DNA of 63,279 nucleotides, filler included, from Octopus bimaculoides (taxonomy: Eukaryota): NCBI RefSeq assembly GCF_001194135.2. It is 4 parts of 4 records of this genome, joined end to end, with 100 filler letters (N's around TTAATTAATTAA, not from the genome) between each part and the next. Parts side by side here need not be neighbours in the genome. Positions count along the whole stretch, not along the records: positions 20,630 to 44,974 come from NC_068981.1; 3 more parts are not named here. The stretch is one strand, 5' to 3'. Made by a program: the position numbers and the translations under genes. Below the pieces are notes generated by a model that made no database searches, was not told the DNA's origin, and saw nothing but the letters and a program-made list of their open reading frames with translations. Position 1 is the stretch's first letter, and each line of letters begins with the position of its first letter. Below are positions 22,844-34,438 of the stretch, one piece after another.

Positions 22844-23452
22844 NNNNNNNNNNNNNNNNNNNNNNNNNNNNNNNNNNNNNNNNNNNNNNNNNNNNNNNNN
22901 NNNNNNNNNNNNNNNNNNNNNNNNNNNNNNNNNNNNNNNNNNNNNNNNNNNNNNNNNNNNNNNNNNNNNNNNNNNNNNNNNNNNNNNNNNNNNNNNNNNN
23001 NNNNNNNNNNNNNNNNNNNNNNNNNNNNNNNNNNNNNNNNNNNNNNNNNNNNNNNNNNNNNNNNNNNNNNNNNNNNNNNNNNNNNNNNNNNNNNNNNNNN
23101 NNNNNNNNNNNNNNNNNNNNNNNNNNNNNNNNNNNNNNNNNNNNNNNNNNNNNNNNNNNNNNNNNNNNNNNNNNNNNNNNNNNNNNNNNNNNNNNNNNNN
23201 NNNNNNNNNNNNNNNNNNNNNNNNNNNNNNNNNNNNNNNNNNNNNNNNNNNNNNNNNNNNNNNNNNNNNNNNNNNNNNNNNNNNNNNNNNNNNNNNNNNN
23301 NNNNNNNNNNNNNNNNNNNNNNNNNNNNNNNNNNNNNNNNNNNNNNNNNNNNNNNNNNNNNNNNNNNNNNNNNNNNNNNNNNNNNNNNNNNNNNNNNNNN
23401 NNNNNNNNNNNNNNNNNNNNNNNNNNNNNNNNNNNNNNNNNNNNNNNNNNNN

Positions 23453-28929: not shown

Positions 28930-29133
28930 CACACATGAATAGCTGTTTGTAAATATGTGCGTGTATGTCTGTGTAGGTGTGTCTATGTGTGTTCTCTGTA
29001 CGCACCTATATATACGTAAATAAATACACACACATATGTATAAACACATGCATTTGCATATACATATATATATATATCTACGTATATGTATATACATATA
29101 CGCGTAATCCCCTATATAAGTATGTATGTATAG

Positions 29134-29190
<57 letters not shown>

Positions 29191-29699
29191 NNNNNNNNNN
29201 NNNNNNNNNNNNNNNNNNNNNNNNNNNNNNNNNNNNNNNNNNNNNNNNNNNNNNNNNNNNNNNNNNNNNNNNNNNNNNNNNNNNNNNNNNNNNNNNNNNN
29301 NNNNNNNNNNNNNNNNNNNNNNNNNNNNNNNNNNNNNNNNNNNNNNNNNNNNNNNNNNNNNNNNNNNNNNNNNNNNNNNNNNNNNNNNNNNNNNNNNNNN
29401 NNNNNNNNNNNNNNNNNNNNNNNNNNNNNNNNNNNNNNNNNNNNNNNNNNNNNNNNNNNNNNNNNNNNNNNNNNNNNNNNNNNNNNNNNNNNNNNNNNNN
29501 NNNNNNNNNNNNNNNNNNNNNNNNNNNNNNNNNNNNNNNNNNNNNNNNNNNNNNNNNNNNNNNNNNNNNNNNNNNNNNNNNNNNNNNNNNNNNNNNNNNN
29601 NNNNNNNNNNNNNNNNNNNNNNNNNNNNNNNNNNNNNNNNNNNNNNNNNNNNNNNNNNNNNNNNNNNNNNNNNNNNNNNNNNNNNNNNNNNNNNNNNNN

Positions 29700-30290
29700 G
29701 AGCTGGGACCTATATACACTGGAAGCTATGCCAACACTATGGAATAACAACAGAAAAAAGATGGTATAAACACACGCCAGAAAAGGTCACAGAAAACGAG
29801 AAAGCAACCATACTCTGGGACATGCCAATACACACAGATAGAGAAATTAATGACAATAGACCAGATATAGTTGTCAAAGATCATGAAGAAAAAAAATGCT
29901 TTCTAATTGATGTATCAATACCAGCAGATGACAACGTTTCTCTAAAAGAAATGGAAAAACTTTCAAAATACAAAGACCTGGAAATAGAGATAACTCGAAT
30001 GTGGAATCTAAAAACAGAAACAATTCCTATCATAGTAGGTCCCTTAGGTATAATAAAAAAAAATATTCAGACAAATACATAACCAAAAATACCAGGACAT
30101 ACAAATATATATAACGTACAGAAAATTGCACTACTGGGTACTGCACACATTCTACGCAAAACACTTTCTATACAGTAAACATAAGAGCACCACAGAAAAC
30201 CACAGCACATACCCAAGGCGCACAGAGCTGCGCTTGGTAGTGAAGTGAAAGCACGTTATAAAAATAAAACTACTGAACAATAATAATAAT
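29700..30290 (+). mobile_element. R4/Dong-like LINE 3' end with well-preserved RLE domain
   Basis: WYKHTPEKV...ILWDMPIHTDREINDNRPDIVVKD...FLIDVSIP...EKLSKYKDLEIEITRMW...PIIVGPLG; then QKIALLGTAHILRKTL; 3' UTR ends in (TAA)n. Confidence 0.9.
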
Positions 30291-30314
30291 AATGATAAAT
30301 GACCTGATTCAGTA

Positions 30315-30902
30315 GAAGCACTGGCTCTGAATGTTCTGATGCTGTAATAGGCACTGGCTCTCAATGCCCTGATGGCACTGGCTCTCATGATTGCTGATCT
30401 TAACTGATTGGAAGTGTTATCATGTACATTGTTTTGTGTTGGTGTAAAAAATGGTGTACCGCATATATTCTGCTGAGCACCATAGATTACCTCGTCACTC
30501 GTTTGACCTTAACCAGTTGAGCATGTCCTTTGGTAGATGCCGATATGTGCGTTTCTGATCACGAGTAGTAGTAAGGGAACATCATATCGATGCGTTGAGA
30601 GGAATTCTTTGTAGTTTGAATAATTCACTTCTGGAAACATAATTGCTTCGTTCAACACCGTTAAACAACCCTTATTCAGGGAACATTGGAGTCGGATGGG
30701 CTAGTGGACCGGAAGAAAATTCTAACTAGGCCCCTCTTGCTAGGTCATGCGATGTTTATCTTCACATGGCAACGCAATATCGCGCACATATGGTTGTGAT
30801 GCATGTGCCTAGTGAACCCTTATCAGATGTGTAGTCATGATGGGTATACAGGGTATATTTTACCTCTGTGTCACTTTGATGGCTTGCAGTGCTCCCTCAT
30901 TC
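30315..30902 (+). mobile_element. Element F, copy 2
   Basis: Colinear with 2138-2665; 5' end has 3 x GCACTGGCTCT. Confidence 0.85.
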
Positions 30903-30938
<36 letters not shown>

Positions 30939-32977: not shown

Positions 32978-33014
<37 letters not shown>

Positions 33015-33052
33015 GAGTCAAAATTAAAAGAAGAGTGCCATTTGTTATCTAG

Positions 33053-33093
33053 TGAACGATATTTCGACATCTCGTGTGTCTTCAACTGGTTCA
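33053..33093 (-). ncRNA. Minimal type-I hammerhead-like motif (core CAGUUGA)
   Basis: Reverse complement of 33510-33550. Confidence 0.55.
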
Positions 33094-33204
33094 AAAAATA
33101 AATTTGTCAATCTACTTCATTTTGGTTAATATAGAAAGGATTGAGGTAATTCCTCCTGAAGATATAGAGTCAAAATTAAAAGAAGAGTGCCATTTGTTAT
33201 CTAG

Positions 33205-33245
33205 TGATCGATATTTCGACATCTCGTGTGTCTTCAACTGGTTCA
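33205..33245 (-). ncRNA. Minimal type-I hammerhead-like motif (one stem I mismatch)
   Basis: As above, with TGATC instead of TGAAC. Confidence 0.5.
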
Positions 33246-33353
33246 AAAAATAAATTTGTCAATCTACTTCATTTTGGTTAATATAGAAAGGNNNNNNNNN
33301 NTAATAATAATAATAGAGTCAAAATTAAAAGAAGAGTGCCATTTGTTATCTAG

Positions 33354-33394
33354 TGAACGATATTTCGACATCTCGTGTGTCTTCAACTGGTTCA
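33354..33394 (-). ncRNA. Minimal type-I hammerhead-like motif
   Basis: As above; this copy may duplicate 33053 across the 10-N gap. Confidence 0.45.
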
Positions 33395-33509
33395 AAAAAT
33401 AAATTTGTCAATCTACTCTTCTTTTAATTTTGACTCTATATCTTCAGGAGGAGTTACCTCAATCCTTTCTATATTAACCAAAATGAAGTAGATTGACAAA
33501 TTTATTTTT

Positions 33510-33550
33510 TGAACCAGTTGAAGACACACGAGATGTCGAAATATCGTTCA
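33510..33550 (+). ncRNA. Minimal type-I hammerhead-like motif (core CAGUUGA, AUC site)
   Basis: UGAAC-CAGUUGA-A-GACA(CACGAGA)UGUC-GAAA-UA-UC-GUUCA: stem I 5 bp, stem II 4 bp, palindromic AUAU stem III. Confidence 0.55.
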
Positions 33551-33805
33551 CTAGATAACAAATGGCACACTTCTTTTAATTTTGACTCTATATCTTCAGG
33601 AGGAGTTACCTCAATCCTTTCTATATTAATAATAATAATAATAATGATAATAATAATAATAATATTTTCCAATTGATTTGGATTCTATTACATATTCCGA
33701 CAGGGTCTCAACTAGGAGACCTAGGACACGTATATATTTGACGGAGAGAAACTTCGTGAGAATATCGCCGGTTGATTTCCAAGGGACCTTGTCAAAAATG
33801 TTTGC

Positions 33806-33843
<38 letters not shown>

Positions 33844-33844
<1 letters not shown>

Positions 33845-34356
33845 GTGAAAGAGCAGTGCATGCCACCAAAGTGACACCGGGGTAAAATATACGAAGCCCA
33901 GTATACTCATCATGATCTGATATGGGTACACAAAGCGGCACATGCATCACAGCCATAAGTGCACGACATGGTGATCTCATATCAAGATAGCAGGTAGGGC
34001 CAAGCAGAACCTTCTTCAGGCCGAGTAGCCCATCGTGCTAAAAATGTCCCGGGATAGGGTTGGTCAAAGGATGATGAGCAAAAACCGATGTTTCCAGGAA
34101 TGAATTATTCAAACCGAAAAGAATTCCTCTCAACACATATTTATGATGCTCCCCGATGACTCCTGCCCGTGATCAGAGATGCACATAGCTTTAACCACCA
34201 AGGGACAAACTCAACCGGTTAGAGTCAAAGAAGTGACAAGTAAATCTGTGGTATTGAGCAGATTTTGGTTATAACCCATCGTTGAAACCAAGACAAAACA
34301 TATATATTATAACACTTCTAAGCAGTAAAGATCAGAAGCCATGAGAGTTAGTACCT

Positions 34357-34357
<1 letters not shown>
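33844..34357 (-). mobile_element. Element F, copy 3
   Basis: Reverse complement is colinear with 2138-2665; (TAA)n on both sides. Confidence 0.85.

Positions 34358-34436
<79 letters not shown>

Positions 34437-34438
<2 letters not shown>

What the first reader, a model, noticed from the sequence alone, without database searches (positions are those of the whole stretch)
33013..33629. 152-bp tandem array with one hammerhead fold per unit: candidate cephalopod non-LTR retrozyme / circular-RNA template
Seen: units start at 33013 and 33165 (period 152), with a third at 33314 and an inverted arm with the same period. Each unit holds UGAAC-CAGUUGA-A-GACA/UGUC-GAAA-UA-UC-GUUCA, meaning a perfect 5-bp stem I, a 4-bp stem II, GAAA, a palindromic AUAU stem III and an NUH (AUC) site. 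Known: short tandem repeats with one type-I hammerhead per monomer define metazoan non-LTR retrozymes (e.g. Schistosoma SMalpha, newt satellite 2), and Penelope-associated hammerheads with a diminished stem III cleave as dimers (Cervera & de la Pena 2014; Lunse et al. 2017). Inference: a read-through transcript would supply the dimer partner in cis and release 152-nt monomers that could circularise. The core (CAGUUGA vs CUGAnGA) deviates at U4 and A6, so these copies may be dead or a novel variant.
Basis: partly seen in the sequence, partly recalled or inferred. Interest (0 to 1): 0.9.

Follow-up and report, generated by a model that had tools for sequence, protein, structure and literature searches.

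The report
Hammerhead-like 152-bp repeat cluster in octopus-like DNA
A young cluster of a 152-bp repeat, in direct and inverted copies inside a TAA microsatellite, looks like the footprint of a Penelope-type retroelement and carries a near-miss hammerhead ribozyme motif, but the catalytic core is wrong, so it cannot be called a working retrozyme.

Summary
The repeat is real. A 152-bp unit occurs as 1.8 direct copies, then the 10-N gap, then a further 104-bp partial copy, then 1.4 inverted copies. All copies are 98.7-100% identical and sit inside a (TAA)n microsatellite. The array is not continuous across the gap: the 116 nt right of it repeat the left junction exactly, so the 'third unit' may be a false duplication.

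It has three hallmarks of Penelope-type minimal hammerheads: an extra base after A9, a G10.1-C11.1 pair and a palindromic AUAU. Its 5' box is CAGUUGA, wrong at U4 and A6, and the only substitution within the motif breaks stem I. No Rfam hammerhead model matches.

I found a second near-miss on the opposite strand, with perfect CUGAAGA and GAAA boxes but almost no helix III.

In the motif's polarity the two arms lie head-to-head and 5'-truncated, with a 39-nt tail. That is the Penelope-like or twin-priming layout.

No other copy could be found, because no cephalopod genome was searchable by DNA.

Best reading (0.4): a retrozyme-like, Penelope-style insertion with a dead or degenerate hammerhead. 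Retrozyme membership fails on the core. Interest 0.35.

The parts
32980..33012 (.). (TAA)11 microsatellite, left flank of the cluster
   Evidence: TRF 32980-33014, 100% matches; sequence.
33013..33164 (+). Unit copy 1, full length. U1-152 lies on the + strand, so the proposed RNA sense R is the - strand.
   Evidence: Reference copy.
33165..33291 (+). Unit copy 2, U1-127, cut by the gap.
   Evidence: 99.2% identical to copy 1.
33292..33301 (.). Assembly gap of 10 N. The array is not in phase across it.
33302..33417 (+). (TAA)4 plus unit copy 3 (U1-104). It is 100% identical to 33001-33116, so it is either a possible false duplication of the left junction or a second block.
33415..33438 (-). Inverted partial unit (rc U1-24). 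It is joined to copy 3 through a 3-nt overlap, ACT, which is the head-to-head centre of the cluster.
33439..33590 (-). Inverted full unit (rc U1-152), with two substitutions: U22 A>T and U138 T>C.
   Evidence: 98.7% identity.
33591..33629 (-). Inverted partial unit (rc U114-152). This 39-nt extension beyond a full unit is 'tail'-like. It also carries U138 T>C.
   Evidence: PLE tails of 30-40 bp are described in PMC8557442.
33630..33664 (.). (TAA)n microsatellite, right flank, in the same strand phase as the left flank.
   Evidence: TRF 33623-33664.
33510..33550 (+). Core CAGUUGA; GAAA at 33538-33541; predicted cut after 33545.
   Evidence: The fold scores -6.6 kcal/mol against an MFE of -6.8.
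33354..33394 (-). The same motif in copy 3.
33053..33093 (-). The same motif in copy 1.
33205..33245 (-). The same motif in copy 2, with stem I broken (GAUCA).
33130..33166 (+). Second hammerhead-like motif, U sense, in type II order: UAUA-GAAA-GGA-UU|GAGG-UAAUU-CCUC-CUGAAGA-UAUA. It spans the junction between units 1 and 2. Both catalytic boxes are perfect, but helix III is a single A-U pair.
33589..33625 (-). Second copy of the U-sense motif, with loop 1 variant UAACU.
33437..33473 (-). Third copy of the U-sense motif, with loop 1 variant UAACU.

Best explanation
This is a young cluster of a 152-bp non-coding repeat embedded in a (TAA)n microsatellite. Its layout is best explained as the product of target-primed reverse transcription of a multimeric or circular RNA.

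Proposed mechanism (inferred, not shown):
- Both strands of the nicked TAA tract primed cDNA synthesis at short UA-rich microhomologies.
- The two cDNAs ran towards each other and were joined at a 3-nt microhomology (ACT).
- This left two head-to-head arms that are 5'-truncated at R49 and about R129. Each arm is longer than a partial unit, and one ends in a 39-nt 'tail'.

This is the architecture described for Penelope-like elements and their non-autonomous derivatives: partial tandem copies, an inverted 5'-truncated copy, microsatellite targets, a 30-40 bp tail, and trouble for short-read assemblies.

The unit carries a Penelope-type minimal hammerhead look-alike 40 nt from its 3' boundary. 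Its 5' catalytic box is CAGUUGA instead of CUGANGA, so I expect little or no self-cleavage.

The element is therefore best called a retrozyme-like or PLE-derived repeat with a dead or degenerate ribozyme, not a demonstrated retrozyme.

Shown: the anatomy, the motif and its statistics. Inferred: RNA-mediated origin, PLE machinery and loss of catalysis.
For: Anatomy and junctions:
- All three outer junctions abut (TAA)n in one strand phase. TAA-type tracts cover only about 3% of the piece.
- In R sense the arms are head-to-head, with different 5' truncation points and 1-3 nt of junction microhomology.
- A 39-nt partial unit lies at one end only.

PLE hallmarks quoted from PMC8557442:
- Partial tandem copies.
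- An adjacent inverted 5'-truncated copy.
- A 30-40 bp tail at one end.
- Microsatellite insertion bias.
- Short-read assembly problems.
- Non-autonomous derivatives that make head-to-tail multicopy insertions.

The motif:
- It has the PLE min-HHR signature features of PMC4209133: a base between 9 and 10.1, G10.1-C11.1, palindromic 15.2/16.2 and a 4-5 bp helix I.
- The narrow descriptor gives 1.7 hits per Mb of composition-matched random sequence. None of the 69 random hits had all three extras, and there is no other hit in the 24-kb piece.
- Helices I and II are the centroid structure of the monomer.

Background in cephalopods:
- They have active Penelope families (PMC13282606).
- The giant squid genome has 235 Rfam Hammerhead_1 hits (PMC6962438).

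Expected loss of activity:
- Core mutations generally cause drastic loss of activity. Only single variants such as U4C or C6 are known to keep weak activity (PMC3088659).
Against: - No other copy of the unit could be found, so family status, a consensus core and covariation are all unknown.
- No PLE reading frame was seen in the piece. Pfam scans of the larger ORFs were negative, and the neighbouring RT fragment is LINE-like.
- The 5' box fails, and no Rfam hammerhead model matches.
- With a permissive descriptor, 2.6-3.5% of random or real 152-nt units give a fit with <=2 mismatches.
- Copies differ at 3 positions (4 variant instances), and the two right-arm copies share a variant absent from copy 1. 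A single circular template therefore does not explain everything.
- DNA-level template switching can also produce microhomology junctions.
- Part of the structure may be an assembly artefact.
Confidence: 0.4

Rival explanations
1. Working non-LTR retrozyme. Read-through R-sense transcripts would fold into dimeric hammerheads that tolerate the CAGUUGA core, release 152-nt monomers and circularise. The circles would template new insertions.
For: - Everything listed for the best explanation also applies here.
- Copy identity of 98.7-100% means recent amplification with this very core.
- The HHR-like fold at -6.6 kcal/mol passes the < -5 kcal/mol stability filter used by Li et al. 2026.
- PLE min-HHRs are known to be very weak in vitro even with consensus cores.
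Against: - There are two simultaneous changes at conserved core positions, U4A and A6U. No natural precedent was found in the papers read.
- No Rfam hit.
- The dimer helix III would be four A-U pairs.
- Only copies 1 and 2 could pair in cis, and copy 2 has a broken stem I.
- The right arm has a single motif.
- The junctions do not coincide with the predicted cleavage site at R107/108.
- The circular monomer is not unusually self-paired: z = -0.37, 57% paired.
- At 152 nt it is below the 170-400 nt RNA size range reported.
Confidence: 0.08
2. Local DNA-level rearrangement. A unique 152-bp segment next to a TAA microsatellite was duplicated in tandem and then partly inverted by replication slippage or template switching. 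Both hammerhead-like motifs would be coincidences.
For: - The unit was found nowhere else.
- Junctions show 1-3 nt microhomology, which is typical of template switching.
- The region is very rich in microsatellites.
- Neither motif is a complete hammerhead.
- A permissive fit is found in about 3% of units.
Against: - It needs several independent breakpoints that all fall at TAA tracts.
- The independent perfect-box motif on the other strand has p about 2e-4.
- Having both by chance is roughly 1e-6 to 1e-4 per unit (14 per 100,000 random units fit on both strands).
Confidence: 0.3
3. Largely an assembly artefact. Two allelic or overlapping contigs were placed side by side with a nominal 10-N gap, and/or a chimeric fold-back join created the inverted arm.
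For: - 33302-33417 duplicates 33001-33116 at 100%.
- The piece is a gap-rich short-read scaffold whose other contig ends sit in microsatellites.
- PLE-like structures are known to break short-read assemblies.
Against: - The inverted join is asymmetric (U104 against U24), not a simple fold-back.
- The arms carry private substitutions: U44 in copy 2, U22 in copy 4, and U138 in copies 4 and 5 but not copy 1. They are therefore distinct sequences, not the same reads used twice.
- The direct 152-bp period lies inside one contig.
Confidence: 0.12
4. DNA copy of an ambisense, viroid-like element with hammerhead motifs in both polarities: an R-sense type I min-HHR and a U-sense type II motif with perfect boxes.
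For: - The two motifs do not overlap and lie on opposite strands, half a unit apart.
- In random units, a perfect-box solution occurs in 0.019% and solutions on both strands in 0.014%.
- No perfect-box solution was found in 2499 real-sequence windows.
Against: - Both motifs are defective.
- The U-sense motif has helix III reduced to one A-U pair with a non-palindromic GGA loop, and an all-A-U helix II without G10.1-C11.1. Its HHR fold (-3.8) loses to an alternative fold (-5.3).
- No Rfam hit.
- From my own knowledge, 152 nt is smaller than any known replicating circular RNA.
- Neither polarity folds better than shuffled sequence.
Confidence: 0.05

Closest known systems
Metazoan non-LTR retrozymes (Cervera & de la Pena 2020, PMC7229834; Li et al. 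2026 preprint)
   Same: A short, AT-rich (31.6% GC) tandem repeat at the low end of the 150-450 bp monomer range. It has one type-I hammerhead-shaped motif per monomer, and it occurs in an animal lineage that carries PLEs.
   Different: - The catalytic box is CAGUUGA, not CUGANGA.
- No loop-loop tertiary contacts are recognisable.
- Only about 2 consecutive units are present, one with a broken stem I.
- The monomer is not highly self-paired.
- No family, expression data or circular RNA is known.
Minimal hammerheads of Penelope-like elements (Cervera & de la Pena 2014, PMC4209133; Lunse et al. 2017, not held in the library)
   Same: A 5-bp helix I, an unpaired base between A9 and 10.1, a G10.1-C11.1 pair, GAAA, a 1-bp helix III with palindromic AUAU that could extend in a dimer, and a UC cleavage site.
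   Different: - The 5' box has U4A and A6U.
- Helix II is 4 bp, where PLE motifs usually have 6-8 bp.
- It is not located in the pLTR of a recognisable PLE.
- No family with covariation is available.
PLE insertion architecture and non-autonomous PLE derivatives such as MRC1 (Craig et al. 2021, PMC8557442)
   Same: Partial tandem copies, an inverted 5'-truncated copy abutting the 5' end, a microsatellite target with no discernible target-site duplication, a 39-bp extension at one end, and an assembly break.
   Different: - The target is (TAA)n, whereas (TA)n, (CA)n and (C)n are the reported targets.
- No autonomous partner with 3'-end similarity has been identified.
- Cephalopod Naiads are reported as old remnants, so a canonical Penelope family would have to be the driver.
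Twin priming of LINE-1 (Ostertag & Kazazian 2001; cited from my own knowledge)
   Same: Two cDNAs are primed from both nicked strands and joined by microhomology, which gives head-to-head 5'-truncated segments.
   Different: Here each arm is longer than one unit, so the template must be multimeric or circular. There is no poly(A), and the neighbouring LINE-like elements end in (TAA)n.
Type II (GSC) hammerheads (Perreault et al. 2011, PMC3088659; PMC10085705)
   Same: The U-sense motif has the order GAAA, then the cleavage site, then CUGANGA, and all conserved core letters are present.
   Different: Helix III is essentially absent and helix II is all A-U. Type II hammerheads were first found among newly identified, largely bacterial and phage-associated examples, and from my own knowledge they are not described in eukaryotic repeats. 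No Rfam Hammerhead_II match.

Membership tests
Metazoan non-LTR retrozyme | Tandem repeat of monomers of about 150-450 bp, from dimers upward | tested here: met
   Period 152. There are 1.8 consecutive units in one contig and 1.4 in the inverted arm. The range comes from PMC7229834.
Metazoan non-LTR retrozyme | Complete type I hammerhead with a consensus core (CUGANGA ... GAAA ... UH) in at least two consecutive units | tested here: not met
   The core is CAGUUGA in every copy. The descriptor gives no hit with 0 or 1 mismatch. No Rfam hammerhead hit at E<=10. Copy 2 also has a broken stem I. The criterion comes from Li et al. 2026.
Metazoan non-LTR retrozyme | Low GC content (<45-50%) | tested here: met
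   31.6% GC.
Metazoan non-LTR retrozyme | Monomer RNA predicted to be stable and highly self-paired | tested here: not met
   Circular MFE -17.6 kcal/mol, 57% paired, z = -0.37 against shuffles. Linear folds give z = -0.04 and +0.44.
Metazoan non-LTR retrozyme | Multi-copy family in the genome, with linear and circular RNAs expressed | not testable with these tools
   No cephalopod genome or transcriptome can be searched by DNA here. The piece, the metagenome and viral collections and the protein collection gave nothing.
PLE minimal hammerhead | Conserved catalytic boxes | tested here: not met
   GAAA and UH are present. The 5' box has two mismatches, U4A and A6U.
PLE minimal hammerhead | [quoted passage not shown] | tested here: met
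   The sequence reads A | GACA...UGUC | GAAA-UA-U. The features are listed in PMC4209133. None of 69 random hits had all three.
PLE minimal hammerhead | Consensus families with covariation and compensatory changes | not testable with these tools
   Only four near-identical copies are available, and the single substitution in the motif is not compensated.
PLE minimal hammerhead | Located in the pseudo-LTR of a PLE that encodes RT and a GIY-YIG endonuclease | tested here: inconclusive
   No PLE reading frame was recognised among the larger ORFs of the piece. The nearby RT fragment has LINE-like relatives. Short decayed fragments were not scanned exhaustively.
PLE-type insertion (pLTR architecture) | Partial tandem copies plus an adjacent inverted 5'-truncated copy, a microsatellite target and a 30-40 bp tail at one end | tested here: met
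   Anatomy. The definition comes from PMC8557442. The topology is met; the mechanism is inferred.
Type II hammerhead | Three helices around the consensus core, with a helix III able to position the cleavage site | tested here: not met
   The U-sense motif has a perfect core, but helix III is one A-U pair with a GGA loop. The HHR fold is not the MFE. No Rfam match.

The most novel reading that the evidence does not exclude
The 152-nt unit is the monomer of a cephalopod retrozyme or viroid-like element that carries hammerhead-type motifs in both polarities. One is a Penelope-type minimal hammerhead whose U4 and A6 are swapped (CAGUUGA) and which still cleaves as a dimer or with host factors. The other is a junction-spanning type II motif with a perfect core. 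It would be the smallest ribozyme-bearing circular-RNA template known and would define a new tolerated hammerhead core.
Probability: 0.05. Interest if true: 0.8.

Novelty: new member of a known kind. Interest (0 to 1): 0.35.

Why it matters
Retrozymes and Penelope-associated hammerheads have been described in cnidarians, bivalves, flatworms, insects and amphibians. In the papers I could search, none has been described in cephalopods, although cephalopod genomes hold active Penelope families and Rfam hammerhead hits.

If genome-wide copies show that this unit belongs to a dispersed family whose consensus carries a working core, it would add cephalopods to the retrozyme map. It would also give a very small (152 nt) model element.

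If the CAGUUGA core turns out to be the family consensus and still cleaves, it would widen the known sequence space of the hammerhead.

If not, the locus remains a tidy example of a Penelope-style tandem and inverted insertion in a microsatellite. It also shows how near-miss ribozyme motifs arise, and how a short-read scaffold can duplicate a junction across a nominal gap.

Tried and rejected
- **Rfam.** I ran cmscan at E<=10 on 1.1 kb and on two 71-nt stretches, and at gathering score on the whole piece. There was no hammerhead or any other ribozyme. The MIR1435 hit (33 bits against a gathering score of 94) only reflects the long AU-rich inverted repeat.
- **tRNA-derived SINE.** ARAGORN found nothing.
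- **Alternative registers of the R-sense motif.** UUGAAGA has one mismatch but loses helices I and II (and hand check).
- **Alternative U-sense helix III.** AGGA/UCCU leaves no room for helix I.
- **Foldback or TIR-transposon reading.** The two outer termini (U1 and U114) are not inverted copies of each other in register.
- **Other copies.** I tried blastn of the unit against the piece. I also tried exact-ORF look-ups of two ORFs, two metagenome scans and two viral-contig scans with degenerate patterns, and a protein search with both long stop-to-stop translations of the array. Blastn against four loci fetched through the neighbouring RT protein was also run. All were empty. None of these collections is a cephalopod genome, so the negatives say little.
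- **Literature string search for the motif.** It found only unrelated siRNA sequences.
- **Lunse et al. 2017.** The paper is not held in the library.
- **Pfam on the larger ORFs.** No hits.
Full report
**1. What is in the sequence**

The piece (20630-44974) is 35% GC. It is full of microsatellites and has five N gaps of 10-609 nt, so it is a short-read scaffold. A reverse-transcriptase fragment 2.3 kb to the right has its best named relative in Octopus vulgaris (66% identity).

Taking U as the + strand reading of copy 1 (33013-33164), the locus reads as follows:

| Coordinates | Content |
|---|---|
| 32980-33012 | (TAA)11 |
| 33013-33164 | U1-152 |
| 33165-33291 | U1-127 |
| 33292-33301 | 10 N |
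| 33302-33313 | (TAA)4 |
| 33314-33417 | U1-104 |
| 33415-33438 | rc U1-24, overlapping the previous block by ACT |
| 33439-33590 | rc U1-152 |
| 33591-33629 | rc U114-152 |
| to 33664 | (TAA)n |

Copies differ from copy 1 at only three positions:
- U44 A>T in copy 2.
- U22 A>T in the full inverted copy.
- U138 T>C in both right-arm copies.

The unit occurs nowhere else in the piece.

**2. The gap**

The left edge of the gap is unit position 127. The right edge is (TAA)4 followed by unit position 1, not positions 128-152. The array is therefore not continuous in phase, and the 149-nt spacing of the 'third unit' is an accident of the nominal gap length.

33302-33417 is 100% identical to 33001-33116. 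There are two possibilities:
- A second block starts behind its own TAA tract.
- The scaffold holds the left junction twice, either as overlapping or allelic contigs or as a gap-closing walk that took the wrong branch.

The other four gaps in the piece are each flanked on at least one side by simple repeats, except the 14-N gap at 35855-35868. A contig starting inside (TAA)n fits the assembler's behaviour.

The inverted arm is not a trivial fold-back. The join is asymmetric (U104 against U24), and the arms carry private substitutions.

**3.

The 41-nt string is present exactly as described, at 33510-33550 (+), 33394-33354 (-) and 33093-33053 (-). In copy 2 (33245-33205, -) the U44 substitution turns GUUCA into GAUCA, which breaks stem I without compensation.

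Features that match the hammerhead architecture:
- A 5-bp helix I.
- A 4-bp helix II whose closing pair is G10.1-C11.1.
- GAAA.
- A15.1-U16.1 enclosing U15.2-A16.2, so the AUAU is palindromic.
- A UC cleavage site.

Cervera & de la Pena (PMC4209133) list four things as features outside their descriptor that argue against chance in Penelope-type minimal hammerheads:
- G10.1-C11.1.
- Palindromic 15.2-16.2.
- Families with covariation.

They also note a short 4-5 bp helix I. Three of the four listed features are met here. The fourth, covariation, cannot be tested.

Against membership:
- The 5' box is CAGUUGA, so U4 is A and A6 is U.
- Core mutations generally abolish activity. Only single natural variants such as U4C or C6 are reported to keep weak activity (PMC3088659). 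I found no precedent for this double change.
- No Rfam hammerhead model (types I, II, III, HH9, HH10) matches, even at E<=10 on 71 nt.
- Whether those models detect minimal PLE hammerheads at all is unknown to me, so this negative is moderate evidence.

**4. Could it be chance?**

| Descriptor | Null sequence | Result |
|---|---|---|
| Narrow: contiguous type I, helix I 5 bp, helix II 4 bp, loop 3-12, <=2 core mismatches, 0-1 spacer | The 24-kb piece itself | Only the three intact copies hit |
| Narrow | 40 Mb of first-order Markov sequence of the same composition | 69 hits, or 1.7 per Mb, about 5e-4 per 304 nt of unit; none with all three PLE extras |
| Permissive: any circular permutation, helices >=4 bp, long closures allowed | Random circular 152-nt units | 2.6% fit with <=2 core mismatches |
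| Permissive | Real windows from this piece and two fetched loci | 3.5% fit with <=2 core mismatches |

The motif is unusual but not overwhelming, and the answer depends on how many arrays the scan looked at.

**5.

The opposite strand (U sense) carries a different motif that spans the unit junction: UAUA-GAAA-GGA-UU|GAGG-UAAUU-CCUC-CUGAAGA-UAUA. It lies at 33130-33166 (+), 33625-33589 (-) and 33473-33437 (-).

- The order GAAA, then site, then CUGANGA is the type II (GSC) permutation (PMC10085705).
- All conserved core letters are present.
- A perfect-box solution occurs in only 0.019% of random units and in 0 of 2499 real windows.
- Solutions on both strands occur in 0.014% of random units.

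The motif is nevertheless structurally poor:
- Helix III is one A-U pair closing a non-palindromic GGA loop.
- Helix II is four A-U pairs.
- The hammerhead fold (-3.8 kcal/mol) loses to an alternative pairing (-5.3).
- Rfam is silent.

I regard this as unexplained. It raises the odds that the unit descends from ribozyme-bearing RNA, but it is not a working hammerhead by current rules.

**6. Architecture and likely mechanism**

| Arm | Strand | Content |
|---|---|---|
| Left | - | R49-152, then (after the gap) R26-152 and R1-152, ending at R152 against the TAA tract |
| Right | + | about R129-152, R1-152 and R1-39, ending against the TAA tract |

Key features:
- The 5' ends are truncated at different points and meet at a 3-nt microhomology.
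- The 3' ends lie at UA-rich sites that share 1-3 nt with the microsatellite.
- One end carries a 39-nt extension beyond a full unit.

This is what Craig et al. (PMC8557442) describe for Penelope-like elements:
- Partial tandem copies.
- An inverted 5'-truncated copy adjacent to the 5' end.
- A 30-40 bp tail at one end.
- A strong microsatellite insertion bias that hides target-site duplications.
- Trouble for short-read assemblies.

[quoted passage not shown] They also describe non-autonomous derivatives that make multicopy head-to-tail insertions. Li et al. (2026 preprint) argue that animal retrozymes are such derivatives.

TAA-type tracts cover about 3% of the piece, so three junctions at TAA tracts are unlikely for random breakpoints. 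Arms longer than one unit require a multimeric or circular template.

All of this is inference from topology. Replication template switching at a microsatellite could give similar junctions.

The predicted cleavage site (R107/108) does not coincide with any junction. That is neutral for a circular template and argues against a cleaved linear one.

**7. Features of retrozymes that are not met**

- The consensus core is absent.
- There are not two consecutive complete motifs (the criterion).
- The RNA is not stable and highly self-paired. Circular MFE is -17.6 kcal/mol with z = -0.37, and linear folds give z of about 0, against the description.
- The size, 152 nt, is just under the reported 170-400 nt RNAs.

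**8. Searches elsewhere**

None of the available collections is a cephalopod genome searchable by DNA. The following all returned nothing:
- Degenerate-pattern scans of the metagenome and viral contigs.
- Exact-ORF look-ups.
- A protein search with the array's translations.
- Blastn against 83 kb fetched through the neighbouring RT.
- A literature string search.

Family size, consensus core and covariation, which are the decisive facts, remain unknown.

**9. What is known in cephalopods**

- The giant squid genome annotation lists 235 Rfam Hammerhead_1 loci (PMC6962438).
- O. vulgaris has 30 Penelope families with recent insertions (PMC13282606).
- Cephalopod Naiads, which lack canonical hammerheads, are old remnants.
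- I found no paper describing a cephalopod retrozyme.

**10. Verdict**

| Reading | Confidence |
|---|---|
| Young Penelope-style (twin-primed) insertion of a short retrozyme-like repeat whose minimal hammerhead has a defective 5' box | 0.4 |
| Purely local DNA rearrangement with coincidental motifs | 0.3 |
| Substantial assembly artefact | 0.12 |
| Working retrozyme with a novel core | 0.08 |
| Ambisense viroid-like derivative | 0.05 |

It cannot be filed as a retrozyme, because the defining core was tested and not met. It may still work like, or descend from, one.

Interest is 0.35. It is worth one genome-wide BLAST and a look at long reads and RNA-seq, after which it will either become a new cephalopod retrozyme family or an ordinary local repeat.

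Noticed in passing
It has perfect CUGAAGA and GAAA boxes but a one-pair helix III. A perfect-box fit occurs in only 0.019% of random 152-nt units.
   Followed up: yes
window 33302-33640: A transcript of either strand would fold into a roughly 105-bp near-perfect hairpin (MFE about -185 kcal/mol for 339 nt), which could be a substrate for small-RNA pathways. The Rfam MIR1435 hit (33 bits, gathering score 94) is only this hairpin.
   Followed up: partly
window 34358-36480 (-) and 29700-30300 (+): Two decayed LINE-like elements are present: an RT fragment at 35923-36480 and conserved C-terminal ORFs at 34857-35183 and at the end of 29126-30082. In each, the 3' UTR runs into a (TAA)n/(AAT)n tract. 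TAA tracts here are therefore partly retroelement tails, and a TAA-primed LINE is an alternative mobiliser.
   Followed up: partly
window 33807-34561, 30149-30938, 38469-38938: An interspersed repeat of 450-800 bp (67-70% identity between copies) is bounded by TAA-type microsatellites. One copy starts 140 nt to the right of the array.
   Followed up: no
window 22844-23452, 29191-29699, 42133-42545: These three gaps in the piece are flanked by simple repeats such as (CA)n, (TA)n and (AT)n, so contigs of this assembly end at microsatellites. That bears on how to read the (TAA)4 right after the 10-N gap. The 14-N gap at 35855-35868 is not flanked by simple repeats.
   Followed up: yes
window 33074-33253 (+), 33112-33246 (-): The tandem array creates ORFs of 44-59 aa that run through more than one unit. 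They have no homologue among 5.8 billion proteins and are best treated as accidents of the repeat.
   Followed up: yes
window 33067-33072 and 33157-33162 (unit positions U67-72 and U145-150): TCTTCA and TGAAGA form a 6-bp inverted repeat that links the 5' box regions of the two hammerhead-like motifs. Both strands therefore contain UGAAGA.
   Followed up: no
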